Virus record (IMG/VR): IMGVR_UViG_3300032770_000001
Location: 391,709 to 455,708 of that record
Direction: 5' to 3' (one strand)
DNA length: 64,000 bases
Shown here: in pieces, positions 20,635 to 50,214 of the stretch
Position numbering within the stretch: the stretch's first letter is position 1
How the letters are laid out: the number at the start of each line of letters is the position of its first letter
Position numbers and translations under genes: made by a program
The notes under the pieces: model-generated
What the model was told of the DNA's origin: nothing
Database searches by the model: none
What the model saw: only the letters and a program-made list of their open reading frames with translations

Positions 20635-23600
20635 TTAGGCGACTTTCAGCCCGTCGCCCTGAATACCTGCAACAATATCTTGAATATAGCGGTGCTCGAC
20701 AACCACAGAGTCGCCCCAGTATGTTACCCCGCTTTCAGGGTTAGGCTCGCCGCTGCTGTAGCTTGAGTCGAGGTTTTCGATGATCCAGTCCTCAGCCGCC
20801 GCCGTCATTGGGGTCAACAGGAAGATGCCGCCCTCGTTGCGAACTTCAAAATCCGGCCCCTCGTAGGGAGCACCTTGTGGGGTGTACTGCGGCTTATCCG
20901 CCTTTTTCTTACGACCACGTGCGCCGGGGTGACCGCTTGACTTCTTGCTGCTGGTCAGCGGAAGTGCCTGCTGATTCGGATCGGGAGCAGGTGCTTCCGG
21001 TTGCTCTTCCTCGTACAGGTTGCCGCCGTACTGCATGAAAACCTCGTGCCCCTGCTTGAGTTCCTCGACCATATCTTCGATCTGGTAACGCTCGTGCCAG
21101 TACAGATTGCCGTTCGGATCAGCGAAGATTTCACCGGAGGTCAGAGCCCCGATGTCGGCGGGATTGACATTCTCCCAGCCGTTGGTGAAGAAGTCTTCCA
21201 TGAGTTCCCAGATGCTCTGGTACGTCTGCGCATCTTGCGGTCCACCCTGAGCAACTTCCTGAAGCAACTGTGCAGTCGGCTTCAGTTTGATGCCGCCCTT
21301 ACCGTAGAGGACATCGACGTAGGTGCCTTTGTCTTCGCCCTTGGTCGGCGTGCGTGCTTCCTGCGCATCCACTTTGTTCTGCTCGTCCTGCTGTTTCAAC
21401 TCATCAAGCGTCACAGCCGTTTTCTTTGATGCGACAGCGGAGTTCGGAACGTAACCGACTTCCGGCTGTTTTGGCTTCAGACCGAGTTGGTCTGGAGTCT
21501 TCGGATTGCCACGCTGCTTCATGTTGAGAATTGCTGGATTTGCCGCTTCCTTGTCAGATGCGATCACTTCACCTTCCTCGTCATCATCATCGAACGGGAC
21601 GTAGCCATCATAATCGGAACGCTCCGGATAGAATGCTGCCCATTCCGCCAATGCTTCAGCGTTGCCGCGACCGGATTCCTTGAAGCGAGCGATCATCTCG
21701 TTCAGATACTCATAGCCATGCGTGGTCAGCGGGTTCTTTAGGAACTCACCGCAGCCTGCGCAGTTCTGCGGACTGTCGGACTCTTGATCGAAGAACGGAC
21801 CTTTCGGATAGTTGTCGGAGTCATAGCTTGACTCGTCTTCCGGGTTCTCCGGGCCTTCGCCGTTCGCGTCGATTCTCTGCGCGATTTTTATAGCGCAGTC
21901 TTCGCACCACACGTCAGCGGCGTAGATGTATTCACCGTCGTTAGAACCACGGATACCACTGTCGGCACCGGGCTCGAATGCTTCTTTTTCCATTGTGCCC
22001 TCTTTCACTTGCTCGTTCTTAAATGTCACGAAACGGTGACGCCCACCGTGCAGAGAAGTTCCGCAGCAATCGCAAGGACGTTTCGAAAACTCATCGATGC
22101 CTTCGCCCGTCTCGCTGTCGAAGTCAGGAACCAGCCAACCCAATCTCTGGATGCCTGCCTGAATCTGCTCCATGCGCTTGTTAGCCTCTTCGCCCTGATA
22201 GTAATAATCAAGGCCGGAGTAGTCATCGTTCACTGCCGCTTGCAGACAGTCGTCGCACAACCACAAATTGTCCTGCTCAATTTCAGCGGCAGTTTTGTTT
22301 GCCTGAATGCCCATGTCTTTCAACATCTGCTTCTCTTCGTCCGTGGGGTTGTATTCCTTCTCGTGCCCGTGGAACTCTTCGATACCCGCAGGCTCTTCCA
22401 ATTCTACGTCACCGGGGGTGATGTAGTCCGCGAGGCTCTGCAACTCAGCCAGTTCCGCATAGCTAATGCGCTCGGCACGAAGTTGGCTACGGAGATATTC
22501 CAGACGCTCCTGAATTTCCTCTGGCTCCAACTCGTCCTCGTCCTCATCAATCCATGCCTTCTTGCTCGATGCTTCCTTGGAGCAAGTGCCGCAGTACCAC
22601 TTGTTGCCGATCTCGTGGCTGCCTTCGTCTACGTCAGATGAATCGAACACCTTACCGCAGCCAGCACATTCAACTTCGCGTGAAGAGGTCTTGTCGCTGC
22701 TTTCGACCGCATCCAGTCCCTCATCCACATGACGATCCATGCAGGATTCGTCGCCAGACTCAATCTCTTCGAGGTCGAGACCTTCGATGCTTTGCCCACC
22801 CTCGGCATCGACCACCGACCAAATCGCACCACACGGTCCGCACGTAACCCACCACTGTCCGTGCTCGAACGCAGGCACGCAACCTTCGTGAATCTCAGTG
22901 AGAGGGTGAGACGCGATTAGACGCTCTACTTCCATCTCCATTTCCGGAGTGTTCTGCTCCGTTTTCAACGCTGCTTTCTTCATGGTGCCCTCTTCTGACG
23001 ACATGTGGAATTTCTTGTTGGGAAGCTCCGGTGGGACGGTCTTCCGCTTCAGCCCTTCGTTTTCTTTCTCCTGTGGCAGCACAGCCATCGGTGCCCCCGG
23101 CTGTCCGGGGATCGGCTGCACTACCGGATTTGGTTCCGCTGTGGGTGCTTGCGGTTGCGCTGCTGGTGCCTGAACCGGAGCCGGAGCCGCCGCCACAGTC
23201 ATGGAAACAACCTTCTCACCCGGCTTGAGCTTCTTGGTAACGGCTTTCTCCGCTCCCTGATAATCGTTGCCGCCTACGGTTTCTTCACGCTGATTGCCTT
23301 TGGTGTCACGCAGGGTGACCTTCCACTTGGCTTCCTTCAACATCTTGATACCGTGATTGCGATTGACACTGTGCTCATTCGCGGTGTCTTCAGTCGTGCC
23401 CCATACCGGACAATTGCGGCACTGCCACATCTTCTCCGGAACGGTGACGCCCTTGAGAGCGTCCGGGTTGCGAGCTAACAACTTGTCCAAACGTCCAGCC
23501 GTCTTGCTTGCACCCTTCATTTTCTTATAAGCTTCGAATTTCTGATCCTGCGGTACACCCGGCATGTGTTCTCCACCACCACGACAAGGGCGTAAATTGC

Positions 23601-25683
23601 AGGTTACACATTCCAGACAACGAGGGCAATACAGATGCGTGCGCTCTTGCTCATCATAGTCCGGTTCCTCAGGCATGTCGGCAGGCAAGAGGTTCTCCGC
23701 AAATTCTGCGGTCTTTGACGCTTGCTTGAGCTTCGAATAACGTTCCCGCATCTGTGCTAATGTCTTTTCGTCGAAACGGATGATGTCGGCATTGCGCTTC
23801 AGACCCTCTTCAGAGCCAAATCCGCCAGTCACCAACTTCTCCTCATCGTTCACGAAATGGTAGGAACCGTCGTTGAGCTTCTCAACTTTCCACTTGGGGT
23901 CATCGAGTTTGATGCCAACGGTCTTCGGCCCGGCGGGTTTCTTGCCGCCATGAATGTATTGCTCGTAATAAGCATCGTGCTCTTCAGCACTGATTTTGCC
24001 AGCATAGCGCAATGCGTCAATCACGCCAGCGATGTAGTTGTAGGCGTTTGAATTCTTTGCTGAGTCATCCCAGATTTTCGTCAGGAAGGTGCCGACATCC
24101 AAACCACGGAGGCTATCCTTCAACTCGGCGACTTTAACTGCTCCGGCATGATAACTGCCTTGCGTGCGTCCATGCGGTGGACGCCCGGTGTCGCCTTCAG
24201 TGATCTGTGGCTGAATGCCATCATAGAATTGATCGCCGCCCTCAGCGCCGTCTTTCTTCTTAGGTTCGGTCTTCTTCATCAACTCCACGGTTTTGTCGAA
24301 GTTTTCGCTGTAGACCGGGCAATCGATGCGGTGCCGTCCATGATAGCCGCCGCAGCACTTTGAAGTGTCAATCGTCGGAACCGAAGTATCGGCAGCTTCT
24401 TTGCAAATGCAATTTTCCTTCACCCGGTCACACGCATCACAGTACGGCACACCAGCAGGCGGGTGAATATCCCGCTCAGTCTGAACCGCAGCCGCTTTCG
24501 GATCATTGATGCCGGGGACGATACCGTGTTCCCAATTCTTGCCACAGTCATTGCACTTGGCAGTCTCGAAGTCGGTCGGCATGAGCCCGTAGTCTGAGGA
24601 GCCGCAGTGTGGGCACTTCGGTTTAGCCGATGCCGTGGCGTGTACTTTCGCCTGCGGTTCTTTCATCTGAGTGATGAGATTGATAAGTTGGTATCCAGTC
24701 TCTTCGCCACGAGGCAACTGTCCTTCGGTCGCAAACTCTTCAAGTAGACCGGGCAGTTCCGAGTAGTAACGCTTCAATGAGTCCTGACCGAGGTTGGTGA
24801 CTTTCAGCCAGTCCTGTACCAGATCGCTCACCGTAATCTTGGCTTCCCCAGTGCTCTCCTGTGCGTGCTTCCAGAACAGTAAGAGAACGATCATGTTGTA
24901 CTTGGCAGCCGTGCGGGATACCTTGGTTGGGAGCCATGCGGCGAATCGCTTCGCTACGTTCTTGAATTCCTGCTCGGATTCAAACTCAGTGTGCGGCGAT
25001 GGAGCATTCAACTGCTGACTGTCGATCAAACTATAAGTTTCGTCCTCCTCGTGCTTGCCGCCAGCAGGCTGCTCGCCGGAGACTTCCTCCGGATGCTGCA
25101 CCTGACGGATATAGCTCTTGGCACGCTCGATGCGGAAGGTAAACTGCTTCTTCAGGAATTCCGTAATCTGTTCGGCCACTGGGAGCTTCTTGACGCCAGC
25201 GGGAAAGTTCTTGATGGCTCGCGGAAAGTCCTGCATCGCCTTGCCGTGCTGGAGCACGTAAAGGATGACGTGATAGATCGCCTCATCCTTCAGTTCGAAG
25301 TCGAGGGTTGTGGATGTGAGTGAGGGAACGAAGACTGTCTGAAACCACTTCGACCAATCCATCTTGGGATCGACCGGATATCCCGCCTGCTCAATGTAGG
25401 ACTTGACGAACTTGTCGAAATCCTTGTTGTAGGCGAAGACGTAGCGGATTCGTGACGCAATACGCGCCTGACCCGGTGAGATCGGGTGGAAATTGGCTGG
25501 GGTCTGAACAGGCTTCCCGGTGTACGGGTCGGCCAACCTGAAGGCGTAGCCGTCCGGTCCGGCGACTTTAGACACCACCCGGTAGGCGGAACCATCGAGA
25601 GTATCGACAATTTGCCCCGGCGCGATAAGGCGGGAAAACTTGGTCAGGTTCGCCGCTGGTACTCGTACAGCGTCCTGAGGCAT
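20635..25683 (-). CDS. 1682-aa modular polyprotein: sigma-like N-terminal domain plus more than 15 K-x-A-delimited modules
   Basis: Linkers KAAA, KEAA, KVA, KQASKTA, KGASKTA, KEA, KKAA, KEASSKKA, KTAA, KKTA, KKKA separate Zn-finger and acidic modules. Confidence 0.9.
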   Translation of the reverse strand: MPQDAVRVPAANLTKFSRLIAPGQIVDTLDGSAYRVVSKVAGPDGYAFRLADPYTGKPVQTPANFHPISPGQARIASRIRYVFAYNKDFDKFVKSYIEQAGYPVDPKMDWSKWFQTVFVPSLTSTTLDFELKDEAIYHVILYVLQHGKAMQDFPRAIKNFPAGVKKLPVAEQITEFLKKQFTFRIERAKSYIRQVQHPEEVSGEQPAGGKHEEDETYSLIDSQQLNAPSPHTEFESEQEFKNVAKRFAAWLPTKVSRTAAKYNMIVLLLFWKHAQESTGEAKITVSDLVQDWLKVTNLGQDSLKRYYSELPGLLEEFATEGQLPRGEETGYQLINLITQMKEPQAKVHATASAKPKCPHCGSSDYGLMPTDFETAKCNDCGKNWEHGIVPGINDPKAAAVQTERDIHPPAGVPYCDACDRVKENCICKEAADTSVPTIDTSKCCGGYHGRHRIDCPVYSENFDKTVELMKKTEPKKKDGAEGGDQFYDGIQPQITEGDTGRPPHGRTQGSYHAGAVKVAELKDSLRGLDVGTFLTKIWDDSAKNSNAYNYIAGVIDALRYAGKISAEEHDAYYEQYIHGGKKPAGPKTVGIKLDDPKWKVEKLNDGSYHFVNDEEKLVTGGFGSEEGLKRNADIIRFDEKTLAQMRERYSKLKQASKTAEFAENLLPADMPEEPDYDEQERTHLYCPRCLECVTCNLRPCRGGGEHMPGVPQDQKFEAYKKMKGASKTAGRLDKLLARNPDALKGVTVPEKMWQCRNCPVWGTTEDTANEHSVNRNHGIKMLKEAKWKVTLRDTKGNQREETVGGNDYQGAEKAVTKKLKPGEKVVSMTVAAAPAPVQAPAAQPQAPTAEPNPVVQPIPGQPGAPMAVLPQEKENEGLKRKTVPPELPNKKFHMSSEEGTMKKAALKTEQNTPEMEMEVERLIASHPLTEIHEGCVPAFEHGQWWVTCGPCGAIWSVVDAEGGQSIEGLDLEEIESGDESCMDRHVDEGLDAVESSDKTSSREVECAGCGKVFDSSDVDEGSHEIGNKWYCGTCSKEASSKKAWIDEDEDELEPEEIQERLEYLRSQLRAERISYAELAELQSLADYITPGDVELEEPAGIEEFHGHEKEYNPTDEEKQMLKDMGIQANKTAAEIEQDNLWLCDDCLQAAVNDDYSGLDYYYQGEEANKRMEQIQAGIQRLGWLVPDFDSETGEGIDEFSKRPCDCCGTSLHGGRHRFVTFKNEQVKEGTMEKEAFEPGADSGIRGSNDGEYIYAADVWCEDCAIKIAQRIDANGEGPENPEDESSYDSDNYPKGPFFDQESDSPQNCAGCGEFLKNPLTTHGYEYLNEMIARFKESGRGNAEALAEWAAFYPERSDYDGYVPFDDDDEEGEVIASDKEAANPAILNMKQRGNPKTPDQLGLKPKQPEVGYVPNSAVASKKTAVTLDELKQQDEQNKVDAQEARTPTKGEDKGTYVDVLYGKGGIKLKPTAQLLQEVAQGGPQDAQTYQSIWELMEDFFTNGWENVNPADIGALTSGEIFADPNGNLYWHERYQIEDMVEELKQGHEVFMQYGGNLYEEEQPEAPAPDPNQQALPLTSSKKSSGHPGARGRKKKADKPQYTPQGAPYEGPDFEVRNEGGIFLLTPMTAAAEDWIIENLDSSYSSGEPNPESGVTYWGDSVVVEHRYIQDIVAGIQGDGLKVA

Positions 25684-38895: not shown

Positions 38896-39855
38896 TTAGT
38901 TCTCGCCGTAGTTGGCGGTCGAGTTGAAGCGACCATTGACCGTAAGACGCTGCACGCCGGACGGGTTGAACACGAGGAAGCCGAGGTTCTCGAAGATCGA
39001 GAAGCCGATCTGACGGAGGTCAGGACGGTCGGCGCTCATGACCGTGAGCGGAATACGCTCTGGGATAACGCCGAGGAACTCTGCGTCCGCCAGAATGTAG
39101 ATCGAGCCGTAGCCGACCTTACGCGACTGGAGGAGCGTTGCGCCCCAGAGATAGCCCATCACGCCCGTTTTCAACAGCTTGCGCTGTGTTTCGCGGTCGA
39201 TGTTCTGTTGGGTCCACTTCAACAGGTCCGTGTAGTCACGGGGGTTGAAGAAGACGAACGCGACTGAGAGGTCATGACGCTGCACCTGACCAAAGCCGTC
39301 TGCCATCGAGTTGATGTCAATCGGAGCGTTGATCGGAATGTCAGGGTTGTAGACCGGATCATTCGAGTTCTTACCCGCTGCGCTGTTCGCGACACCGTCA
39401 AACAGAACGAACACGTATCCGTCTTCGGCTGCGCCCACTTCGGCTTTCGCCAAGTTCAGTGAACGAGCAACCAAGTCGAAACGGCGCTCTTTGATCTGCG
39501 TGATCGGGATCATCGGATTGGACACGATTTCGAACGTCGGAACCGTGACGCGCTTCGGTTTTGTAACGCGGACGATGTCACCACCTTCTTCGCCGACGAT
39601 GAATGCTTCGACGAAGGACGAACCCGGAGTCGAGCCAACGGTCATCGCGTTGACATCGAATTCCTTGTCGTAGATGGGCAGTGCGCCATCCGGAAGAGTT
39701 TCGACCATGAGAGCCTTGCGAGCAATGCTCATATAGTCACGGCGACGACGCAGGGACGGACCGAGCGAAGCCGCAAGCTTCTGACGCCCACCCGCCGTCT
39801 TCAAAAGTTGGCCGAGCATTTGCGTCTGCTGTTGTGTGCGAGAAAGTTGTGCCAT
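38896..39855 (-). CDS. Major capsid protein (HK97 fold)
   Basis: 319 aa; gene order protease-scaffold-decoration-MCP-terminator; DYMSIARKALMVETLPDGALPIYDKE, VPTFEIVSNP, GFSIFENLGFLVFNP; GAGGAG RBS. Confidence 0.9.
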   Translation of the reverse strand: MAQLSRTQQQTQMLGQLLKTAGGRQKLAASLGPSLRRRRDYMSIARKALMVETLPDGALPIYDKEFDVNAMTVGSTPGSSFVEAFIVGEEGGDIVRVTKPKRVTVPTFEIVSNPMIPITQIKERRFDLVARSLNLAKAEVGAAEDGYVFVLFDGVANSAAGKNSNDPVYNPDIPINAPIDINSMADGFGQVQRHDLSVAFVFFNPRDYTDLLKWTQQNIDRETQRKLLKTGVMGYLWGATLLQSRKVGYGSIYILADAEFLGVIPERIPLTVMSADRPDLRQIGFSIFENLGFLVFNPSGVQRLTVNGRFNSTANYGEN

Positions 39856-40437: not shown

Positions 40438-40537
40438 GCTGATTCCTCCACCTTGAGTTTTGGTTCAGTTGAGCAGTTTGAATTTGCCGTTCCCAATCCG
40501 GCCTGTGTTCGCAGGCTAAAGGACTATAGGACAGCGT

Positions 40538-40559
40538 GCTCAATAAAGAGGCAGGTAGT
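40538..40559 (-). promoter_or_regulatory. Putative late promoter of the decoration-MCP operon (ACTAC-N12-TGAGC)
   Basis: Bipartite motif about 100 nt upstream of 40437. Confidence 0.55.
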
Positions 40560-40631
40560 GAAAAAACCCAATTACTTGCGAAAAAATTATTTCGATGGGA
40601 TTTCTGCTATAATTTTCAGGTATTTACCGAT

Positions 40632-41093
40632 ATGAGTGTCTCCACAAACAGACGCCGTCTGAGAGAGCAAATCTTCACTCTGCTCGGCAATCGCTGTGTC
40701 GGGCCGGATTGCGGGTGGATTAACGAAGACGGGACTCGTGGGTGTACCGATATCCGATGCCTTCAAATTGACCATAAAAACGGCGGCGGACATCAAGCAG
40801 TTCTCAAAGCCGGAAACAACTACGAGCATTTGAAAGAAATCTTACGAGACCCAGAAATTCACGAACACTATCAGCTTCTCTGCGCCAACTGCAACTGGAT
40901 CAAACGACATCTGAACAACGAATTCAATCGCAAAGGAACTCGACAATCGACCGAGCGTCAACTTCGTATTCGAGACATGATTTTAGAACGACCTGATCTC
41001 ACTCAAGCGGCTATCGGAGAGATTTTCGGCATCAGCCGGGTATCGGTGTACCACATATCCAAAAAGTTTGGAATCCAACCCACCAAGCAATGA
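40632..41093 (+). CDS. HNH-type homing endonuclease with C-terminal HTH
   Basis: LQIDHKNGGG...YQLLCANCNWIK; LTQAAIGEIFGISRVSV; TGcTATAAT at 40605..40613. Confidence 0.85.
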   Translation: MSVSTNRRRLREQIFTLLGNRCVGPDCGWINEDGTRGCTDIRCLQIDHKNGGGHQAVLKAGNNYEHLKEILRDPEIHEHYQLLCANCNWIKRHLNNEFNRKGTRQSTERQLRIRDMILERPDLTQAAIGEIFGISRVSVYHISKKFGIQPTKQ

Positions 41094-41752: not shown

Positions 41753-44008
41753 TTAGAACTCTTCGCTGCCGAACAGCGCGGTTGCAATGTCCACAGGCTT
41801 CGGCGAAGCGACGACCGGGCGAACACGCTTAATGCTGCCCTTCTTCTCGTCCTTCTTCTCTGATGCCGCCTTTGCTGACTGTTTCGGAGCCTGCAATTCC
41901 GGACGTGCATCTTGAGGAGTGCGCTTTGCGCCCTGCTCTTCAGGCTTGATGTCCTTCATTGCTTCCGCGAACAAGTCCTCATCGTGATCGGTGTCGTTGT
42001 CGCGTGCTTCCGAACCGTCCTGCTTGAAGTGGTTCGCCGCGTCAACAAACGCCTCGACCACGTCTTCGCCTTCAACGCTGGTTGCCGTTTTGTTGTCAAC
42101 CGACGCCATCAGGCTGGCAAGCGGATCATTTTCCGAGCCCTGAACTGTGAAGTAGTCCTCGATTGAAGCGACTTGCATACCGCTGTCTTCGAGTGCTGCT
42201 TCCATCTGTGCCGCCGAGGTCGGTGCGAAAAAGTCTTCCGCAGCCATGTGCTCGACGCTACCGTCGCCTTCGTTTGCAAGAGCCGAAACTTTATCGTCCA
42301 TTGCACCCTCATCAAATACGGACGAAAGGTCAAGCTCGCCCTCTGCCGGGCCTTCAGTCTCTTCGAGCGAAATTTCTTCCTCGCCTTCCAACGGAAGAGC
42401 AGGCTCTTCCTCGGACTCTTCGAGAATTTCCTGTTCGAGTGCCTTGATCGCTTCCTCGGCTTCCTCGATCTTTTCCTGCACGACCATCTTCTTCTCGTCG
42501 GTCAGGATTGCACCAGCGGCTTCCTCAGGCGGTGCGCCTGCATCGCCAGCCGGAGCTTCTGCCAACGGATCGCCCGGTGCTTCAGGAGCAGGCGGTGCGT
42601 CTGGAGCCGGAGCATCGACCGGAGCTTCCGCTGCCGGATCGTCTGCGACTTTCTGATCTGCGCCCTTTACTGGAGGAGCAGGGAGATCGGCCTTCTTTTC
42701 GGCAGCAGCTTTCTTCTCTGCGGCAGCCTTGCACTCAGGGCAATCACCAGCACACTTGCCGTCCTTGCCATGAGCAGTCTTCGCGGCAGCCTTCTTGCTG
42801 TCGCCTTCGGAGAGGTTCACGGTCTGACCCGGCTTCTCACCAGCGTCCGGACGCTCGGCGGCTTTACCCGCTTCGAGTTCCTTCGGCTCAGTGTGCTCAC
42901 CGCCGCCGCAACCGCGACCATCGTTGTACGTGCCTGTCTGTGGACCTGCATCCTTGCGGTCGTCGGCAGTCTTCGCGGCTGCTTCTTTCGCAGAACCATG
43001 AAGTTCCTTTTCGACGGCGGCACGCTCAGACTTGAGCACGGACGGGTCTTCAAGATACTGATTGAGTTCGGTCTTGTGGACTTCTTTGAACTGTTCAGCA
43101 AGGTGGGTGGAGTGAGCGTTCTTTGCGGTCTGACGGAGGGCGGCGACGAGAGTCTTCGTGTCATTGCCATCCAGCAGCGATGTCGCGAATGCTTGACGAC
43201 GCTCGACGGAGGCTGTCGGCAACATCGTGTTAGCGATGGTATACGCCGCAGCCGTGCGAATCTGTGCTTCTTTCTTGATAGACTCGCGCTGTTTCTTTGC
43301 CTCAGCGAGCTTCTCTTTCAGATTCGCGGGCTTGGTAGCAGTCTGATTTGCCATGGTAGAGCCTTCCTTTTTCATGTCAGAACGGGCAGAAACGCCCTTC
43401 TTTAGAGGTACTTGATAGTTATTTTTCTTGCTAATTGGAGCTTTTGCACTAGCAAGGGGTGCTTCCAGAGGGGCTGCTTCCGCAGCCGCATCATCTGTGG
43501 GAAGTGGTTCTGCCGCCCCAGCCGCGCCGTCAACCGGGGGCTCAGGGGTAGCTGCCGGAACAGCAGCTTCAGGGGCAGGAGGGGGTTCCGGTGCCGGGGG
43601 TGCTGCCGGAGCGGAAATGCCAAGATCGGGTGCCGGGGGTGCCAGCGGTGCTGCCGGAGCAGCCAAGGGATCGATAGCGGGTTCACCGCCAGATGCGTCG
43701 GCGATCTGCGAATCCAGACCATCCAAAACGGACTTGATCTCTTCCGACCACGGTCCGCCCTTGAACTTTTCCCACTCACCAATCAATTGCACGCCTTCGC
43801 GCATGTGACGAATTTCTTCTTCGAGTTCTTCGCGCTTCTGGGAGAGGAGGTCGAATTCCGGCGATGGGCCGAGATCAGTGGGTGCGTCGGGAGCCATCTC
43901 AGGCATACCCATAAGCTGGTCGTCCATGCCGTCCAGCAGGGCTTGTTTACGAGCGATTTCCGCCGCTACGTGTGATTTGATCTGTGCAACTGTCTTCGGT
44001 TTTGCCAT
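41753..44008 (-). CDS. Prohead scaffold/core protein
   Basis: 751 aa, acidic, Pro/Ala-rich, coiled coils; many K-x-A motifs (KEAAAKTA, KKAAAKTA, KKAAAEKKA, KVA, KTAT); lies between protease and MCP. Confidence 0.8.
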   Translation of the reverse strand: MAKPKTVAQIKSHVAAEIARKQALLDGMDDQLMGMPEMAPDAPTDLGPSPEFDLLSQKREELEEEIRHMREGVQLIGEWEKFKGGPWSEEIKSVLDGLDSQIADASGGEPAIDPLAAPAAPLAPPAPDLGISAPAAPPAPEPPPAPEAAVPAATPEPPVDGAAGAAEPLPTDDAAAEAAPLEAPLASAKAPISKKNNYQVPLKKGVSARSDMKKEGSTMANQTATKPANLKEKLAEAKKQRESIKKEAQIRTAAAYTIANTMLPTASVERRQAFATSLLDGNDTKTLVAALRQTAKNAHSTHLAEQFKEVHKTELNQYLEDPSVLKSERAAVEKELHGSAKEAAAKTADDRKDAGPQTGTYNDGRGCGGGEHTEPKELEAGKAAERPDAGEKPGQTVNLSEGDSKKAAAKTAHGKDGKCAGDCPECKAAAEKKAAAEKKADLPAPPVKGADQKVADDPAAEAPVDAPAPDAPPAPEAPGDPLAEAPAGDAGAPPEEAAGAILTDEKKMVVQEKIEEAEEAIKALEQEILEESEEEPALPLEGEEEISLEETEGPAEGELDLSSVFDEGAMDDKVSALANEGDGSVEHMAAEDFFAPTSAAQMEAALEDSGMQVASIEDYFTVQGSENDPLASLMASVDNKTATSVEGEDVVEAFVDAANHFKQDGSEARDNDTDHDEDLFAEAMKDIKPEEQGAKRTPQDARPELQAPKQSAKAASEKKDEKKGSIKRVRPVVASPKPVDIATALFGSEEF

Positions 44009-44904
44009 TAGCGTATTAGCCTCCCGCGTAAATCGGCGTTGAGTAAAGCTTCCCCCAAATCAAGGGTCTCGAAATCATTATTTTTACTGGCAATTTTTGT
44101 AAGCTTTGCGATCTTGCCAGCCCCAGCCGCTTTGGTGTATGGAGATTTGGGACCGATCCATACCTCGCCGCCCTCGATAATGTTGCGTTTCGAGGCTCCG
44201 GGGAACGCTGGGGTCGCAACCCAAGAAGCTTCCACGAACTTCACACCGCCGTTCGGCAACGTCTTGTGACCGCAGAGTTCAGCGATGCGACGGGCGATGC
44301 CGTCTTCGTCCGGAAGGAAAGTGCCCTTCTGGTACGACAGATGATTGCAATAGGTGCTTTGATCGGTGACATGGGTGCCGCAATAAGAGCAGATCACCAG
44401 ATCGGTGACGCAACCCATCGACAGATAGCGAACTTCCTCGTTCTTGATGTCCTCAATCAGTTTCTCGTGTCCGAGATCGGTAGCGACGAGGATATCGACG
44501 AAGTACACCCAAACTTCGTTGCCGACAACGTGCACCTTACGAAGCTGGGAATCCAGAATGTGCCCTTTGGCGTACTTGCTGTTCTGGTAGTGCTCAACGA
44601 AGTTGAAGGCACCAGTGAAACTCTTGTGCGAAAGCTTTATGACCTCGTTCGTCCATGCGTCATCGTTGTTGTTGACAAGATGCGCAGTCTCCGGCTTGAT
44701 GAGGTAGTCGTAAGGATCGTGCTCAGTCATCACGCTCGCCATGATGGTGCAATGCGAAAGCATGTACCGGGAATTGTCGGCGGCGATTTTGATTTCCGAC
44801 GCTTGCTTGTGACCGAAGGCACGATTGCCATACATCAACTGCCAGTCGTTGGCAGAGACAATGGGGTCTTCGATAAGCGCGTTGGCAAACTTCTTGAAAG
44901 GCAT
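44008..44904 (-). CDS. Prohead maturation protease (assemblin/HK97-type Ser protease with Zn-finger insert)
   Basis: NNNDD, FVEH (His), LSMGC (Ser), CSYCG...CNHL, FVEASWVATPAFPGA. Confidence 0.85.
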   Translation of the reverse strand: MPFKKFANALIEDPIVSANDWQLMYGNRAFGHKQASEIKIAADNSRYMLSHCTIMASVMTEHDPYDYLIKPETAHLVNNNDDAWTNEVIKLSHKSFTGAFNFVEHYQNSKYAKGHILDSQLRKVHVVGNEVWVYFVDILVATDLGHEKLIEDIKNEEVRYLSMGCVTDLVICSYCGTHVTDQSTYCNHLSYQKGTFLPDEDGIARRIAELCGHKTLPNGGVKFVEASWVATPAFPGASKRNIIEGGEVWIGPKSPYTKAAGAGKIAKLTKIASKNNDFETLDLGEALLNADLRGRLIR

Positions 44905-44909
44905 AGGTC

Positions 44910-44932
44910 TTCTATTAAAATAGGGCTAAAGT
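44910..44932 (-). promoter_or_regulatory. Putative late promoter (ACTTT-N13-TAGAA)
   Basis: Upstream of the protease gene. Confidence 0.55.
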
Positions 44933-47778
44933 CAGAAAAAGCTCCCACAACGAGTACACTCTAACATCCCGGCGACTGCCGCGACCTTTTTCCCCTGTGT
45001 ATTGTTGCAGTTACCGCATTTTGATCCAACACGGTGCTGAGTGCCTTCAAACCACTCATTGGTGTACTCTTCACCCAGTTCATCCCACAACTGCTCCATA
45101 CCGATTCCGGCATCCTGAGCCTGTTGCAGCATAAATTTGTCTTCCATGAACGCAGCTTTGGCTTCTTTCTGAACGTCGCGGACCTGATCCATGAAATGTT
45201 CGTCTTGCTCATCCATGCGCATCTCTTCGCCGAGGTCGGCGGTCTTGCCAGCGACCGAAGTCATCGTGAGAAGACTCGATTCCAATGAATCCGCTTCTCC
45301 TGACGGATTGAGATTCGGATCAATCTGACCGTTCGAAGGTTTCTGCTGCGGTTGAGCAGGCTGCGCAGGGTTGACACCTTCCATCACTTCGTCCTGAACG
45401 TTCTGGTCGATGTGACGACGCATGTCATCGCGTTGTGGCAGGAACTTCGGAGTTTCATGGAACTCAATCGACTCAGCCGGAGGAACAACGGCTCTTTTAT
45501 CGAGCGTGTCTGCGGTGCGCAGGGCTCTCAGCAGCGAACCGAGATGGCTACTGGCAGTCGTTCCCTCTTCATCCTCTTCTCCCTGAAGTATGTCGATGGC
45601 GTTGATATCGCCGCCAATCGGCACACCCGTACCATACGTCTTGGTGATGGCTGATTCTTTCTCATGCGGTGGATCAGAAATCTTTTTGAATTTGCCTTCG
45701 CAGTTTGCGCAGGAGTCAACTTCTACCGTGGTTTTTGGTGCTGAGCAACGGCAGGTCTGCACGCTATGGCAGTTCTTGCACACGATGCGTTCATGATGAT
45801 GTTCCGCATGTTTGACACCCAGATAACCTTCACTCCCGTCATCCTGACCCAATGCTTTCTTGAGTTCACGGTGGAAAGTTTTGGCGTATGTTGCCATCGA
45901 CGATTCTTTCGGTTCTGCCTTTTCGGGCTCACCCTTTAGGGCTTCAACCGGGACATCGATATTGCCCCCAGCCTCAGTAAACATGGTGTCATCATCACCC
46001 TCGTTCTCTGCGCAGCACGCATTCGGAACCACGTGCATACCCCAGAACGAACACCACGACTTGCGCCCTTCCGGGTCTTCACCCTGAGCTTCGCTACCGT
46101 ATTCGCAGCGGTGACAACCGAAACCTTTCACGTGCGGACGCTCAGTATACTTGGCGTCTTCCTTCGTGAATTTGTGCTTCATCGGTGCGTCAGTTTCGGG
46201 GTCGCCCAGATGATAGAGACGGCAGGAGCCCGTCGTGAAACTGATCGGGCCATTTACACGGGCGCACTCATCGGTGCCCCGGCGCATATCGCAGGTACCG
46301 CACAAGTAGTTGCCGCTCGGATCGAACGGCTTAATCGTGTCAGTGTTGTCGCTCTCTTCCGCATACTGAGCCCAGTCTTTTGCCTCTTGGCGAACGTGCG
46401 CTTCGTGCTCGAAATCGTATTCACCCGTGTCTGGAACGTTGCCTTCCTCTTCTTCAGAAGCATCAGCCTGTTTCTCAACATCCTCATCGGGACGAAGAAC
46501 CTGCCCTTCCGTGTCGGGACGCACAATACCAGTAGCTTGATCGACTTTATCTCTAAAAAGGTCGGACGGAGATGGACGGATCGCACCGGACTTGGTGACG
46601 GTCACATCACTCTGACTGCTGTAACGCTGGGAATACAACTTACGCTGCTCCTCGGTCGGTGTGGCTTCCTTGGCTTTGATGGCGTTGCTCAGCACGAACC
46701 ACTCGGCTTGCATACCACAGTAATTGCTCTCTTTCGGACGGAGGCGGTTGCGTGCCGTGCAAATGTCGGCGAGAGCCACGCCTTTGATCTTGCCTACGGT
46801 CTGCCAAACGAACCCACGGTTTTCGGCGAAGTATTTGGCGGTGTCCCAGTTCGAAGACCACGATGTGACTTCACGATGGCTCCCAGTCCACGTCGGGATT
46901 CCCTCGTTGTGATACTTCTCGTTATACTCCCCGTAGTACCCCGGCTCGCCGCGATACAAGCACTTGCCTTGCGTCCACTGATTCGGTACGAACGCAGGAA
47001 TAGTCTTGATGATCGGAGCCAGCTTTTCGATGGGAGCATCAGGGACAGAAACATAGTCGGCGACCATGTTCCAAAGCTCATCGTCATCGGCAATCAGATA
47101 GCAGGCACGTTCGTACTTGCTATTTGGGTCGTCAGCCAGTTCCTTGAACCGTTTGTCGAAATCGCCGCCGACCGCAGCCTTTTTCTTGAGGCTGGCTTTG
47201 ATGCCAATGTCCTTCAACCACTTTTTCTCATCATCAGTCGGATTGTAAGTTTTCTCGTGAACGACGGGCTCAGATGTCGGGTTCGGGTCGTCCATGATCT
47301 GCAACATGTCGGCGAGGTCTTCAGTGTTGCGGCTCCAAACCTCGATTTCGCCCTCGTCGAGCATCATCCAGAACGGCCCGGCTTCGTCGGCATGAACCAC
47401 GATCTGCGTGTCCGGCCACTCCGGGTACGTCCATGATTCCATGCCGCTCAATGAACTCGGAGTATAGCCGTGCGACTGGAGGATGTCCCGCCACACGTCG
47501 TCCTGATATTGTTTGTTCGGATCGCCCTCTTTGAAGAACGTGCCCTTTTCGATAGTCGGCATCTCCTCGACAAGATTGTCTCCGGTGTCGGGATCGGTGA
47601 CTTCCTGCGCGGTAACATTCAGCGCACCTTCCTCAACCTCGGTGCCCTTGCCCATCAATTTACCGTTCTGGGTGGTATAGTCGGGATCGGAATGCCACAT
47701 GCCTGACTGCGCACGATCAGGATCGTTGTACATCTGATTGAGTGCTTCGAGTGCCCGTTTTTGGAAGAGAGGATTCAT
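44932..47778 (-). CDS. 948-aa modular polyprotein with ADP-ribosyltransferase and HiPIP-like modules
   Basis: LYRG...TSWSS...QAEWFV; two CxxC...C...C modules; linkers KRA, KKKAA, KQA, KKA, KHA, RTA, KTA. Confidence 0.85.
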   Translation of the reverse strand: MNPLFQKRALEALNQMYNDPDRAQSGMWHSDPDYTTQNGKLMGKGTEVEEGALNVTAQEVTDPDTGDNLVEEMPTIEKGTFFKEGDPNKQYQDDVWRDILQSHGYTPSSLSGMESWTYPEWPDTQIVVHADEAGPFWMMLDEGEIEVWSRNTEDLADMLQIMDDPNPTSEPVVHEKTYNPTDDEKKWLKDIGIKASLKKKAAVGGDFDKRFKELADDPNSKYERACYLIADDDELWNMVADYVSVPDAPIEKLAPIIKTIPAFVPNQWTQGKCLYRGEPGYYGEYNEKYHNEGIPTWTGSHREVTSWSSNWDTAKYFAENRGFVWQTVGKIKGVALADICTARNRLRPKESNYCGMQAEWFVLSNAIKAKEATPTEEQRKLYSQRYSSQSDVTVTKSGAIRPSPSDLFRDKVDQATGIVRPDTEGQVLRPDEDVEKQADASEEEEGNVPDTGEYDFEHEAHVRQEAKDWAQYAEESDNTDTIKPFDPSGNYLCGTCDMRRGTDECARVNGPISFTTGSCRLYHLGDPETDAPMKHKFTKEDAKYTERPHVKGFGCHRCEYGSEAQGEDPEGRKSWCSFWGMHVVPNACCAENEGDDDTMFTEAGGNIDVPVEALKGEPEKAEPKESSMATYAKTFHRELKKALGQDDGSEGYLGVKHAEHHHERIVCKNCHSVQTCRCSAPKTTVEVDSCANCEGKFKKISDPPHEKESAITKTYGTGVPIGGDINAIDILQGEEDEEGTTASSHLGSLLRALRTADTLDKRAVVPPAESIEFHETPKFLPQRDDMRRHIDQNVQDEVMEGVNPAQPAQPQQKPSNGQIDPNLNPSGEADSLESSLLTMTSVAGKTADLGEEMRMDEQDEHFMDQVRDVQKEAKAAFMEDKFMLQQAQDAGIGMEQLWDELGEEYTNEWFEGTQHRVGSKCGNCNNTQGKKVAAVAGMLECTRCGSFF

Positions 47779-48684: not shown

Positions 48685-50214
48685 TTACTCAGCGGCGGCT
48701 ACCAGCTTGAGACCACCGAACACCGAGGACTGCTTTCCTTTGCTGCCCTTGGCATCCTTGATCTTCTCGGCTTCTGCCGCCGACTCTTCCTGAATCTCCT
48801 GCTTGTTGAGGACTTTCACGGCCTCATCAAACATGTCGCCTGCGCGGAAAATGGCTTCAACCGCTTCACGCACCGGACGCGAACTGTTGGTCTGAACCAA
48901 CGGCTTTGCATCCAAATACATGCGCTTCAGCGTTTCGCCTAGCCTTTCCGCCTCCTTCACAGCCTTGCTCGTGCTCATCTCGGCTGCTAATTTGATAGGC
49001 GCTGTCGTTTCTGGACGCTTGATCCCGGTGTTGTCGTCACGCTCTGAGTGCGCTTTCGCGATCTCAGGGACGCGACTTCCACCGTCTGTCACATCCATCG
49101 TGTCTTGATCCTGAACGAACCAAGCACCACCGTTGCCACTCGCAATCTTGCGTGCGATTATGGCAGCCGCGTACTTCGCACCTGCATCAAATGCAGCTTC
49201 GATCTGCTGTGAAGATTCCTTCTTGTTGTGAATTGACCATGCCGTTGCATAGGCTTTGTCTTTTTCGCCGGGGTACTCATCCTTCAGCTTGTGCATGAGG
49301 GATTCGCTGATTCCCGGAGGCGTAACGGCAACCTTTGCCGAGGCGTCCTTCTCATCCTCGAAACCGACGAGGGCGAGACCGCCAAAACGCTTCAGGTCGA
49401 AGATCGGTGACGCGGCCTTGGACGAAGCAGCTTTCGGCGCTTCAGGTGCCACAGGCTCAACGGGGCGATTCTTCAAAATTTCCGCGAGGCGTTCAACCGC
49501 AGCTTGCACGGACTTGTTGGCTTCGAAGCCCTCCAGACCCGTAAGGTCTTTCACTAGCTGAGCGATGAACTCGCTCGGCAGCGACTCGAACAGCGTGTCG
49601 AGAGACCCATCACCAACCGGGCCGCCCGGTGCCGGAGCAGCGGGAGCGGGGGCTGGAGCCGGAGGCGGCACAGGAGCGGCAGCCGCAGGAGCAGGAGGAA
49701 TCGGGGCGGCACCAGCAGCCGGGTCTTCCGCTTCCTTCTTTTTCTTGCGTGCAGCTTCTTTATCAGCAGCCAAACGAGGAACATCAGCCTTTTCAGGAGC
49801 TTTCGGCTGACCCTTCTCGTCACGGTCGGTCACGAAGGCGGAATCCGCTGAACCAGCGGCATCCTTCTTCGACGCCATTGATGGCTTTCCGACTGGAGCA
49901 GTTTGAGTTACCTTTGCGGGGCGTTGTTCCCCACGCCAATTTGCAATCATGTCAACCTCTTGTTTTACTTTCTGTGCGATCTCCGGCGAGTACGAATCGT
50001 CGAGATAGCTGTCAGAGTTTGGTGCTGCTGAAACTTCTTTCAGGTAATCAATCGATGATGCCAACTGATCGACCTTTGGATCATCCAGCCCTTCCTGCAT
50101 CCACTGATTCAGAAGCGATTCACCAATCGAAATCGCATCACGTACAGTTTCAGGTGACGTGAGGATCGTGCTTTTCTTCGTTGCCGCTGCGCGGCGTTCC
50201 ATCAGTTTGCTCAT
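48685..50214 (-). CDS. K-x-A-punctuated putative head/core protein
   Basis: 509 aa; KDAA, KEAA, KEA, KAASSKAAS, KDASAKVA, KIAS, KLAA; KAYATAWSI motif. Confidence 0.8.
   Translation of the reverse strand: MSKLMERRAAATKKSTILTSPETVRDAISIGESLLNQWMQEGLDDPKVDQLASSIDYLKEVSAAPNSDSYLDDSYSPEIAQKVKQEVDMIANWRGEQRPAKVTQTAPVGKPSMASKKDAAGSADSAFVTDRDEKGQPKAPEKADVPRLAADKEAARKKKKEAEDPAAGAAPIPPAPAAAAPVPPPAPAPAPAAPAPGGPVGDGSLDTLFESLPSEFIAQLVKDLTGLEGFEANKSVQAAVERLAEILKNRPVEPVAPEAPKAASSKAASPIFDLKRFGGLALVGFEDEKDASAKVAVTPPGISESLMHKLKDEYPGEKDKAYATAWSIHNKKESSQQIEAAFDAGAKYAAAIIARKIASGNGGAWFVQDQDTMDVTDGGSRVPEIAKAHSERDDNTGIKRPETTAPIKLAAEMSTSKAVKEAERLGETLKRMYLDAKPLVQTNSSRPVREAVEAIFRAGDMFDEAVKVLNKQEIQEESAAEAEKIKDAKGSKGKQSSVFGGLKLVAAAE

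What the first reader, a model, noticed from the sequence alone, without database searches (positions are those of the whole stretch)
44008..44904. The prohead protease domain is itself bracketed by K-x-A motifs
Seen: the catalytic region starts right after KQASEIKIAA and is followed by KAAGAGKIAKLTKIAS. Known: prohead proteases typically self-trim N- and C-terminal extensions at their own recognition site. This independently supports an Ala-P1/Lys-P3 specificity, closer to herpes assemblin (cleaves after Ala) than to the Glu-specific T4/phiKZ enzymes.
Basis: partly seen in the sequence, partly recalled or inferred. Interest (0 to 1): 0.7.

Follow-up and report, generated by a model that had tools for sequence, protein, structure and literature searches.

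The report
Prohead protease flanked by Lys-x-Ala sites
A capsid-maturation protease of a 456-kb soil phage has short, conserved Lys-x-Ala-Ser/Ala motifs in the disordered linkers on both sides of its catalytic domain, most likely self-cleavage sites that point to an Ala-specific (herpesvirus-like) rather than Glu-specific (T4-like) enzyme, but nobody has yet measured the cleavage.

Summary
ORF 44008-44904(-) encodes a 298-aa protein with KQAS/KIAA at residues 33-42 and KAAG/KIAK/KIAS at 258-273.

It is a prohead protease: PHROG 18299, assemblin/T4 gp21 fold at Z about 10, invariant His105 and Ser162, and a position between head genes with a TAATG overlap onto a scaffold-like gene.

Three of the motifs (K33-x-A35|S, K39-x-A41|A, K270-x-A272|S) are conserved in 120 close homologues. 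They lie exactly in the only two segments with pLDDT below 50. The other two (K258, K264) are not conserved.

Among 150 representatives at 50% identity or less, K.A is the most enriched of all gapped dipeptides just after the core. [KR]-x-A-[ASG] occurs there in 99/144, against about 23 in shuffles.

K.A is also the top-enriched pattern in this genome's structural module. The same statistic recovers I.E and L.E on T4.

Published N-terminal sequencing of phage G capsid protein, whose protease gp19 is a homologue, implies cleavage at ALA27|Q28. That site aligns exactly with K26-L-A28|A29 here.

Ala at P1 is therefore well supported. Lys at P3 is a strong preference, not a rule. Self-trimming is inferred, not shown. 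The herpes likeness holds at P1/P1' only. This is a new variant of a known kind.

The parts
44008..44904 (-). Prohead (head maturation) serine protease gene, 298 aa plus stop (P0001)
   Evidence: ORF. PHROG 18299 'head maturation protease', E 2e-15. Tunturi_5 gp331 is 58.6% identical and annotated the same way. Assemblin/T4 gp21 fold.
44800..44904 (-). Predicted N-terminal propeptide, residues 1-35 (or 1-41 if the second site is used). It holds the conserved F3-x-K5-x-A7-N-A9, W21 and a helix at 18-25.
   Evidence: Conservation, model. Removal is inferred.
44797..44808 (-). Motif 1, K33-Q-A35|S36: predicted N-terminal self-cleavage site
   Evidence: K 116/120, A 99/120 and S 89/120 in close homologues. 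pLDDT below 50. The Q-A-S-E-I element recurs in distant relatives.
44779..44790 (-). Motif 2, K39-I-A41|A42: second predicted N-terminal site, 4 residues before the first core strand
   Evidence: K 102/120, A 98/120 and A 100/120. pLDDT below 50.
44134..44778 (-). Catalytic core, residues 43-257 (assemblin/T4 gp21-like fold), pLDDT mostly above 90
44590..44592 (-). His105, predicted catalytic histidine (motif V-E-H-x-Q)
   Evidence: Invariant in 78 diverse sequences. By extrapolation from the 24-column hhalign register it would correspond to T4 gp21 His in 'ELNHP'. Assignment is inferred.
44419..44421 (-). Ser162, predicted catalytic serine (motif L-S-M-G)
   Evidence: Invariant. Resembles T4 'VSSRG'. 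Relatives carry inteins immediately after this motif. Assignment is inferred.
44341..44391 (-). Zinc-ribbon-like insertion C172-x2-C175...C186-x-H188 inside the protease core
   Evidence: C172, C175 and C186 are invariant. Weak Pfam zinc-ribbon hits below cut-off. Also present in phage G gp19 and Catera gp94. Metal binding not tested.
44104..44133 (-).
   Evidence: position 258 is Q/R/K, and position 264 is a gap in 76 of 120.
44086..44097 (-). Motif 3, K270-I-A272|S273: predicted C-terminal release site, 26 residues from the C-terminus
   Evidence: A 119/120, S 113/120, K 84/120 with M 29. A272 is at least 90% conserved in the diverse set, where 'KAAS' is the only consensus in the linker. Family-wide enrichment. 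pLDDT below 50.
44011..44085 (-). C-terminal tail, residues 274-298, with a conserved amphipathic helix (283-289); proposed capsid/scaffold-targeting peptide that is cut off
   Evidence: Conservation, helix. Function inferred by analogy with HK97, T4 and herpes proteases.
41753..44008 (-). 751-aa Ala/Pro/Glu-rich scaffold-like protein whose start overlaps the protease stop (TAATG). It has 7 K.A[AS] sites and about 12 positional clusters of [KR].A[ASG] among orthologues.
39769..39780 (-). K26-L-A28|A29 in the major capsid protein (gene 38896-39855): predicted maturation cleavage site
   Evidence: It aligns exactly with the phage G gp27 A27|Q28 site implied by N-terminal sequencing.
48685..50214 (-). 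509-aa head-module protein with 8 K.A[AS] sites (2.0 expected): candidate substrate
20635..25683 (-). 1682-aa protein of unknown family with 8 K.A[AS] sites (1.4 expected): candidate packaged substrate

Best explanation
The gene encodes the prohead maturation protease of a 456-kb phage, with an assemblin-fold serine protease core (predicted His105/Ser162) that carries a zinc-ribbon-like insertion. It is made as a zymogen-like precursor: an N-terminal propeptide, a disordered linker, the core, a second disordered linker and a C-terminal amphipathic tail.

Proposed mechanism, all inferred:
1. The tail, and possibly the N-terminal peptide, targets the enzyme into the assembling procapsid next to the scaffold-like product of the overlapping downstream gene.
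2. Once concentrated there, the enzyme cuts after the Ala of [K/R]-x-A|[S/A/G] motifs.
3. It cuts itself at A35|S36 and/or A41|A42 and at A272|S273. This frees the core from its tethers, much as herpes assemblin does at its R and M sites.
4. It cuts the capsid protein at A28|A29.
5. It cuts the scaffold-like 751-aa protein and several large head-associated proteins at multiple sites.

Shown here: the motifs, their conservation, their location in disordered linkers, the fold, the enrichment statistics, and the alignment to an experimentally derived Ala|Gln capsid cleavage in phage G.
For: Identity as a prohead protease:
- PHROG 18299.
- Fold match to VZV protease (Z 10.2) and T4 gp21 (Z 10.0).
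- BFVD neighbours are phage G gp19, RSL1 and PaBG proteins, then XkdF/HK97-type prohead proteases.
- H105 and S162 are invariant.
- Gene order and the TAATG overlap with the scaffold-like gene.

Motif conservation:
- Conserved in 120 homologues.
- 'KAAS' is the only consensus in an otherwise unalignable linker among 78 diverse sequences.
- Among 150 representatives at 50% identity or less, K.A is the top gapped dipeptide in the 45 aa after the core (159 against 57 expected, z 13.5), and R.A is second.
- [KR].A[ASG] is present in 99/144 C-flanks (shuffle mean 22.7, max 38) and 92/146 N-flanks (shuffle mean 15.6, max 27). Glu-type motifs are not enriched in the C-flank.
- Phage G gp19, Tunturi_5 gp331 and Catera gp94 show the same bracket.
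- The motifs fall in the only two segments with pLDDT below 50.

Substrate side:
- K.A is the most enriched of 400 gapped dipeptides in the structural module (z 4.7) and unremarkable elsewhere in the genome (z 1.6).
- Thr at P2 and Ala at P1' are preferred only in the structural set.
- Orthologue families of the protease, MCP and the 751-, 948- and 509-aa proteins carry 2-8 times the expected motif count. Four other neighbouring families carry about the expected number or fewer.
- In the cultured Tunturi_5, four head-module proteins have 20 sites against 3.6 expected, and 13 other (mostly tail or unassigned) proteins have 1 against 3.2.

Method control: the same statistic on T4 gp67/68/21/22 returns I.E and L.E, the known gp21 motif.

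Experiment in a relative: phage G MCP is 282 aa as precursor and 255 aa when mature by N-terminal sequencing (PMC5646251 Table 1). Masses recomputed as 31.19 and 28.17 kDa fit cleavage at GRVALA27|Q28. That position aligns column for column with K26-L-A28|A29 here.
Against: - There is no direct cleavage data for this protein or any close relative.
- The MCP N-terminus is conserved throughout, so conservation of its K-L-A-A says little on its own.
- Positional conservation of individual sites in the 751-, 509- and 948-aa proteins is patchy, and alignments of these low-complexity proteins are unreliable.
- The phage G MCP site has Ala, not Lys, at P3, and Catera's aligned site is R-L-G|Q.
- Phage G gp20 and gp21, next to its protease, show no [KR].A[ASG] motif.
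- The enrichment counts use related sequences, so they are not independent events.
- The N-terminal 32 residues and the C-terminal helix are themselves conserved and could stay attached.
- A complex prediction of core plus C-terminal tail gave no verdict. The full-length AF2 model did not dock either linker into the active site.
Confidence: 0.62

Rival explanations
1. The protease does cut at these linkers, but the true determinant is small P1 Ala with small P1' (Ser/Ala/Gly/Gln) plus hydrophobic P4/P5. On this reading Lys/Arg at P3 is a frequent but dispensable preference, so 'Lys-P3 specificity' overstates the case.
For: The phage G MCP site is A-L-A|Q with no basic P3. A subfamily has L-V-x-Q-A|S-E-I before the core without Lys at P3. 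The C-flank logo shows hydrophobic P5 (L/F/I/Y) and P4 (L/Q/A/M) and a K61/R38 mix at P3. K270 is Met in 29 of 120 close homologues.
Against: K or R at P3 is still present in about two thirds of diverse flanks, against about 16% in shuffles. K.A, not x.A in general, is the top-enriched pattern in the structural module.
Confidence: 0.2
2. The conserved K-x-A-S/A elements are not cleavage sites. They would be short linear docking or structural motifs, for example contacts with capsid protein, portal or scaffold, or helix caps, and the protease stays full length or is trimmed elsewhere.
For: No cleavage data exist. The flanking N-terminal segment and the C-terminal helix are conserved, which is expected if they function in the mature enzyme. 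No confident docking of the linker to the active site was predicted.
Against: The same tetrapeptide recurs many times in unrelated head-module proteins and in fast-evolving low-complexity regions. It lies in disordered linkers. It coincides with an experimentally implied cleavage position in phage G MCP. The T4 control shows that this kind of enrichment marks protease sites.
Confidence: 0.1
3. The sites are cut by a different protease, either a host enzyme or another phage-encoded one such as a ClpP-type protease, and not by this enzyme.
For: Some phages use host proteases for capsid maturation (Staphylococcus 80alpha, listing). Phage G also packages ClpP/ClpX.
Against: The motif co-varies with this protease family across hosts as different as Acidobacteriota, Bacillus/Lysinibacillus and Mycobacterium. 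It also brackets the protease domain itself in fused and unfused forms.
Confidence: 0.04
4. The bracket arises by chance or from composition, because Lys and Ala are common in these linkers.
For: The linkers and scaffold-like proteins are rich in Ala and Lys.
Against: Composition-corrected expectation is 0.27 against 3 observed. Shuffles of the same flanks give 23/144 and 16/146 against 99 and 92 observed. Column conservation stands out amid variable neighbours.
Confidence: 0.02

Closest known systems
Herpesvirus assemblin (MEROPS S21; VZV, HCMV, HSV and KSHV proteases)
   Same: Shared fold (VZV Z 10.2, HCMV Z 8.0, KSHV Z 6.8). The predicted P1 Ala and P1' Ser match the herpes (V/L/I)-x-A|S rule (established knowledge). 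Self-release would occur at a site just after the catalytic domain (R-site-like) and at a site about 25 residues from a C-terminus (M-site-like). Many relatives have the protease fused to a long C-terminal extension.
   Different: No sequence match to Pfam Peptidase_S21. P3 is basic here but hydrophobic in herpes. Here the protease and the scaffold-like protein are separate genes that overlap by one base. The zinc-ribbon insertion is absent from herpes enzymes. A Ser-His-His triad has not been established.
T4 gp21 prohead protease (MEROPS S77, Pfam Peptidase_U9; PDB 5JBL)
   Same: Fold match at Z 10.0 over 127 residues. Local motif match V-N-x-N...(Y/W)...L, and similar H and S-x-G motifs by eye. 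Both are zymogens bracketed by their own recognition motif: T4 has L-I-E near the N-terminus and I-T-E near the C-terminus. Both have many sites in scaffold or core proteins.
   Different: T4 cuts after Glu in [L/I]-x-E. Glu-type motifs are not enriched after this protease's core. There is no Pfam U9 hit, and hhalign finds only 24 alignable columns.
phiKZ gp175 / SPN3US gp245 giant-phage prohead proteases (MEROPS S80)
   Same: Giant-phage setting, self-cleavage, and processing of many head and ejection proteins at a short motif (PMC10052503).
   Different: Those enzymes cut after Glu (A-x-E or S/A/G-x-E), and for gp245 only a C-terminal self-cleavage is described. Direct sequence or fold comparison with gp175 was not run here.
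Bacillus phage G gp19, Tunturiibacter phage Tunturi_5 gp331 and mycobacteriophage cluster C gp94 (PHROG 18299 / 2774)
   Same: True homologues with the same H, S-M-G and C-x2-C...C-x-H motifs and the same K-x-A bracket. Their capsid proteins are homologous.
   Different: None of them has a described cleavage motif. gp94 is a 1369-aa fusion. Phage G's MCP site lacks the P3 Lys.
HK97 gp4 / XkdF-type prohead proteases (MEROPS S78, COG3740)
   Same: BFVD fold hits at E 1e-8 to 1e-6. HK97-fold capsid protein of about 300 aa.
   Different: No Pfam Peptidase_S78 hit. The capsid protein here has only a roughly 28-residue N-terminal extension and a separate scaffold-like protein, rather than a delta domain.

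Membership tests
Phage prohead serine proteases of the assemblin fold (MEROPS clan SH, broad sense) | Assemblin/T4 gp21-like fold | tested here: met
   VIA-align gave VZV protease Z 10.2 and T4 gp21 Z 10.0, the only two hits with Z of 8 or more in the whole-model count (HCMV protease scored 8.0 after realignment). Foldseek's top hits were the same proteins but weak, at E about 0.03.
Phage prohead serine proteases of the assemblin fold (MEROPS clan SH, broad sense) | Conserved catalytic His and Ser | tested here: inconclusive
   H105 and S162 are invariant in 78 diverse sequences. By extrapolating the 24-column hhalign register and comparing the sequences they resemble the T4 'NHP' and 'SSRG' motifs. 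The residues were not superposed in 3D, and the third catalytic residue is unassigned (H188 may be a zinc ligand).
Phage prohead serine proteases of the assemblin fold (MEROPS clan SH, broad sense) | Located in the head-assembly module next to scaffold and major capsid protein genes | tested here: met
   Gene order. The Tunturi_5 synteny is protease, gp332, gp333, then major head protein. The MCP matches PHROG 2522 at E 7e-42.
Phage prohead serine proteases of the assemblin fold (MEROPS clan SH, broad sense) | Profile match to a curated protease family | tested here: met
   PHROG 18299 'head maturation protease', E 2.1e-15. No Pfam family passes its threshold.
Herpesvirus assemblin (S21) | Sequence membership (Pfam Peptidase_S21) | tested here: not met
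   No hit at E up to 1. No PDB sequence hit.
Herpesvirus assemblin (S21) | Cleavage after Ala, before Ser, at release and maturation sites | not testable with these tools
   Only indirect support: conserved K-x-A|S/A in the linkers, and the phage G MCP A|Q site from N-terminal sequencing.
Herpesvirus assemblin (S21) | Protease translated as an N-terminal fusion to the scaffold protein | tested here: not met
   Here the two are separate ORFs joined by a TAATG overlap. Many relatives are 450-1400-aa fusions, but similarity of their extensions to the 751-aa protein is weak (E about 1e-4).
T4 gp21 family (S77, Pfam Peptidase_U9) | Sequence membership | tested here: not met
   No Pfam hit. hhalign aligns only 24 columns, with low probability.
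T4 gp21 family (S77) and phiKZ gp175 family (S80) | Recognition motif ending in Glu ([L/I]-x-E or [S/A/G]-x-E) bracketing the enzyme | tested here: not met
   Neither motif is enriched in the C-flank (62 against 57, and 161 against 146). L.E enrichment in the N-flank comes from one conserved subfamily segment.

The most novel reading that the evidence does not exclude
A very large, mostly uncultivated clade of jumbo and megaphage proteases would share a basic-x-Ala|Ser/Ala specificity. The clade has 887 representative clusters at 50% identity matching at E <= 0.001 and includes phage G, Tunturi 5 and cluster C mycobacteriophages. It would also share a herpes-like self-release architecture: an R-site-like cut after the core, an M-site-like cut about 25 residues from a C-terminal targeting helix, and protease-scaffold fusions in many members. 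If so, Ala|Ser cleavage and the release logic of herpes assemblin exist within tailed phages, either as an ancestral Duplodnaviria trait or as a striking convergence.
Probability: 0.3. Interest if true: 0.75.

Novelty: new variant of a known kind. Interest (0 to 1): 0.55.

Why it matters
Experimentally defined cleavage rules for phage prohead proteases of large phages are essentially all Glu-P1 (T4, phiKZ, SPN3US). A defined [K/R]-x-A|[S/A] rule for this widespread clade would have three uses.

- It would let mature ends of capsid, scaffold and packaged proteins be predicted directly from metagenomic huge-phage genomes.
- It would give a sequence handle for finding head-internal or ejected proteins, which are the proteins enriched in the motif.
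- It would provide a phage counterpart to the herpesvirus Ala|Ser assemblin system for studying how specificity evolved on a shared fold.

The prediction is directly testable in three cultured systems: phage G, Tunturi 5 and Bxz1-like mycobacteriophages.

Tried and rejected
- Complex prediction of core (43-257) with the C-terminal tail (258-298): no answer, score 0.01. This is neither for nor against binding.
- PDB sequence searches: the single sequence gave nothing. The profile gave only low-complexity artefacts such as huntingtin polyQ and designed repeats.
- hhalign against T4 gp21: global mode failed. Local mode gave 24 columns only, so the catalytic-residue correspondence rests on motif resemblance and invariance.
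- Pfam: no family for the protease, the 751-, 948-, 509-, 221-, 190-, 188-, 144- or 1682-aa proteins, or the + strand ORF at 40536-41093.
- Site-by-site conservation in the 751-, 509- and 948-aa orthologues: patchy. Most exact K.A[AS] positions of this genome are kept in fewer than a third of orthologues. Clusters appear only under the relaxed motif. I therefore rely on family-level counts rather than on individual substrate sites.
- MCP site conservation among close relatives: uninformative, because the whole N-terminus is nearly invariant.
- Literature searches for a described cleavage motif in this family (Tunturi, phage G multi-omics, jumbo-phage comparative genomics, Bxz1): none found. 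The only relevant datum is the mature length of phage G MCP.
- Homology of the relatives' C-terminal extensions to the 751-aa protein: only three weak hits, so 'protease-scaffold fusion' in relatives remains a suggestion.


Full report
**Setting.** The window is bases 391709-455708 of a 455,708-bp IMG/VR phage record. The target ORF, 44008-44904 on the minus strand, encodes a 298-aa protein, P0001. It lies in a minus-strand head/tail module, in this order:
- sheath (50704-54642; PHROG tail sheath)
- a 144-aa protein
- a 509-aa protein
- a 221-aa protein
- a Cys-rich 948-aa protein
- the target
- a 751-aa Ala/Pro/Glu-rich protein, whose ATG overlaps the target's stop codon (TAATG)
- a 190-aa protein
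- a plus-strand ORF
- a 188-aa protein
- a 319-aa major capsid protein (PHROG 2522, E 7e-42)

The closest cultured relative is Tunturiibacter phage Tunturi_5. Its gp331 is 58.6% identical and annotated 'head maturation protease', and the neighbourhood is syntenic. The paper describing Tunturi 5 contains no proteomics or protease analysis.

**The observation.** KQASEIKIAA is residues 33-42, and KAAGAGKIAKLTKIAS is residues 258-273. K.A[AS] occurs three times against 0.27 expected from composition (p about 0.003).

**What the protein is.**
- No Pfam family passes threshold, and there is no PDB sequence hit.
- PHROG 18299 'head maturation protease' matches at E 2e-15.
- An AF2 model built on 78 diverse sequences has mean pLDDT 80.7, with the core mostly above 90.
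- In an exhaustive structural search the model's best matches are varicella-zoster virus protease (Z 10.2) and T4 gp21 (Z 10.0), followed by HCMV and KSHV proteases. Foldseek ranks the same proteins first, but weakly.
- Among predicted viral structures the nearest are phage G gp19, a Gordonia phage protein, and Ralstonia phiRSL1 and Pseudomonas PaBG proteins. XkdF/HK97-type prohead proteases follow.
- H105 and S162 are invariant across the diverse set. By extrapolating the short hhalign register they would correspond to the His and Ser motifs of T4 gp21.
- An invariant C172-x2-C175...C186-x-H188 element forms a zinc-ribbon-like insertion.
- Relatives carry Hint+LAGLIDADG inteins right after S-M-G and before C211. 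Inteins typically target essential sites.

I conclude that this is a prohead serine protease of the assemblin fold. It belongs to a distinct sequence family that is very large in metagenomes: 817 clusters at 90% identity and 887 representatives at 50% identity.

**Are the flanking motifs meaningful?**
- In 120 close homologues, K33/A35/S36, K39/A41/A42 and K270/A272/S273 are kept in roughly 70-99% of sequences. The P2 residues and the surrounding linker vary. K258 and K264 are not conserved.
- In the 78-sequence diverse alignment, the only consensus in the long post-core linker is 'KAAS', and A272 is at least 90% conserved.
- The AF2 model's only segments below pLDDT 50 are 28-42 and 258-281, which are exactly the two motif linkers.
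- I ran an unbiased scan of all gapped dipeptides in the 45 residues after the core end, using 144 representatives that share at most 50% identity. K.A ranks first (159 observed, 57 expected, z 13.5, in 115 sequences) and R.A second.
- [KR].A[ASG] is present in 99/144 C-flanks (shuffles: mean 22.7, maximum 38). It is present in 92/146 N-flanks (shuffles: mean 15.6, maximum 27).
- The C-flank logo is hydrophobic at P5, L/Q/A/M at P4, K61/R38 at P3, A/K/T/V at P2, A at P1 and S61/A31/G7 at P1'.
- Glu-type motifs ([LI].E, [SAG].E) are not enriched after the core.
- Phage G gp19, about 26% identical in the core, shows KTA|A before the core and KVA|S and KIA|S after it. Tunturi_5 gp331 shows KTA|A and KVA|S. 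Catera gp94 shows KTA|G after the core.

**Do other head proteins carry the motif?**
- Genome-wide, K.A[AS] occurs 130 times against 84 expected. The excess sits in about ten large proteins of the structural region (54 against 16), and the rest of the proteome is at expectation (76 against 68).
- Of 400 gapped dipeptides, K.A is the most enriched in the structural region (239 against 177, z 4.7). It is unremarkable elsewhere (z 1.6).
- Only in the structural set does K.A show Thr at P2 and Ala at P1'.
- Orthologue families drawn from 80 related loci carry 7.8x (protease), 6.4x (MCP), 2.8x (751-aa), 2.5x (948-aa) and 2.0x (509-aa) the expected count. Four other neighbouring families carry about the expected number or fewer, and two of them have none.
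- The sheath has one site, and the F5/8-domain tail protein has fewer than three.
- In cultured Tunturi_5, gp328, gp331, gp332 and gp334 together hold 20 sites against 3.6 expected. Thirteen other proteins, mostly tail or unassigned, hold 1 against 3.2.
- As a positive control, the same statistic applied to T4 gp67/68/21/22 returns I.E and L.E as the top two, which is the known gp21 motif. Applied to this phage's protease plus the 751- and 509-aa proteins, it returns K.A.

**An experimental anchor.** Hua et al. 2017 (PMC5646251, Table 1) list the phage G capsid protein gp27 as 282 aa and 31.2 kDa as precursor, and 255 aa and 28.2 kDa when mature, based on N-terminal sequencing.
- Recomputed masses of 31.19 and 28.17 kDa fit removal of 27 residues, that is cleavage at G-R-V-A-L-A27|Q28.
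- gp27 is 34% identical to this phage's capsid protein (E 2e-65). Both pairwise and multiple alignments place A27|Q28 exactly on A28|A29 of K26-L-A28|A29.
- Because phage G's protease gp19 is a homologue of P0001, Ala at P1 has experimental backing in this family.
- It also shows that Lys at P3 is not obligatory, since phage G has Ala there. Catera's aligned site reads R-L-G|Q.

**Mechanism.** The shown parts are the motifs, their conservation, the disorder, the fold, the enrichment and the alignment to the phage G cleavage site. The rest is inferred.
- The enzyme would be made with an N-terminal peptide (1-35 or 1-41) and a C-terminal amphipathic tail (274-298), each joined to the core by a disordered linker.
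- Once concentrated in the procapsid it would cut after Ala in [K/R]-x-A|[S/A/G]. That would release itself, trim 28 residues from the capsid protein, and fragment the scaffold-like 751-aa protein and other internal proteins.
- The C-terminal site lies 26 residues from the end. This resembles the herpes M site, which removes a capsid-binding tail of about 25 residues. The post-core position resembles the R site (established knowledge of herpes assemblin).
- Many relatives are 450-1400-aa proteins with the protease domain at the N-terminus. Homology of their extensions to the 751-aa protein is only weakly supported.

**Comparison and verdict.**
- The herpes likeness is real at P1/P1' but not at P3. 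By fold the protein is no closer to herpes enzymes than to T4 gp21.
- I found no published description of this motif.
- The protease itself is an annotated, known kind. The predicted specificity and the release architecture make it a new variant of that kind.
- My confidence is about 0.75-0.8 that the family cuts after Ala. It is about 0.6 that this enzyme trims itself at the three conserved sites.

Noticed in passing
Relatives P0137, P0122, P0150 and P0166; insertion points correspond to window 44410-44421 (after S162-M-G) and about 44270-44275 (before C211): Several homologous protease genes are interrupted by inteins with Hint and LAGLIDADG domains. The inteins sit immediately after the catalytic S-M-G motif or before the invariant C211-G-H. 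This window's gene has no intein.
   Followed up: partly
Window 40536-41093 (+): This is the only plus-strand ORF inside the minus-strand head module. It has HNH-like strings (IDHKNGGGH...CANCNWIKRH) and looks like a homing endonuclease inserted between head genes. Pfam gave no hit.
   Followed up: partly
L085:5932-10041 (Mycobacterium phage Catera gp94): The cluster C mycobacteriophage homologue is a 1369-aa protein, annotated only as hypothetical. The protease domain is at its N-terminus and a Phage_L5_gp82 domain lies at residues 640-757. It sits two genes upstream of the major head protein.
   Followed up: partly
Window 44880-44892 (residues 5-9 of the protease): The extreme N-terminus, F-x-K5-x-A7-N-A9, is conserved across the whole family, often as K-x-A-S-A in distant members. 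It could be a further site or a pseudo-substrate peptide. No explanation was tested.
   Followed up: no
Window 44932-47778 (-): This 948-aa protein just upstream of the protease carries many CxxC pairs and has no family match. Its orthologues range from about 380 to 2000 aa and also carry excess K.A[AS].
   Followed up: no
P0097: One 63%-identical protease homologue is recorded on an 894,233-bp contig. That is longer than any phage genome I know of. It could be a very large phage, a host contig with a prophage, or an assembly artefact.
   Followed up: no
Window 41753-44008 (-), residues about 251, 341, 352 and 403 of the 751-aa protein: Under the relaxed motif [KR].A[ASG], the scaffold-like protein family shows about 12 positional clusters kept in 30-86% of 43 orthologues (for example R-T/V-A|A at about 251 and K-D-A|G-P at about 352). 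This suggests fragmentation into many peptides, as happens to T4 gp22.
   Followed up: partly
L084 (phage G gp20, gp21): Phage G's two genes downstream of its protease carry no [KR].A[ASG] motif, although gp19 itself is bracketed by K-x-A-[AS]. Either its scaffold is cut at a looser motif or it is not cut at all.
   Followed up: no
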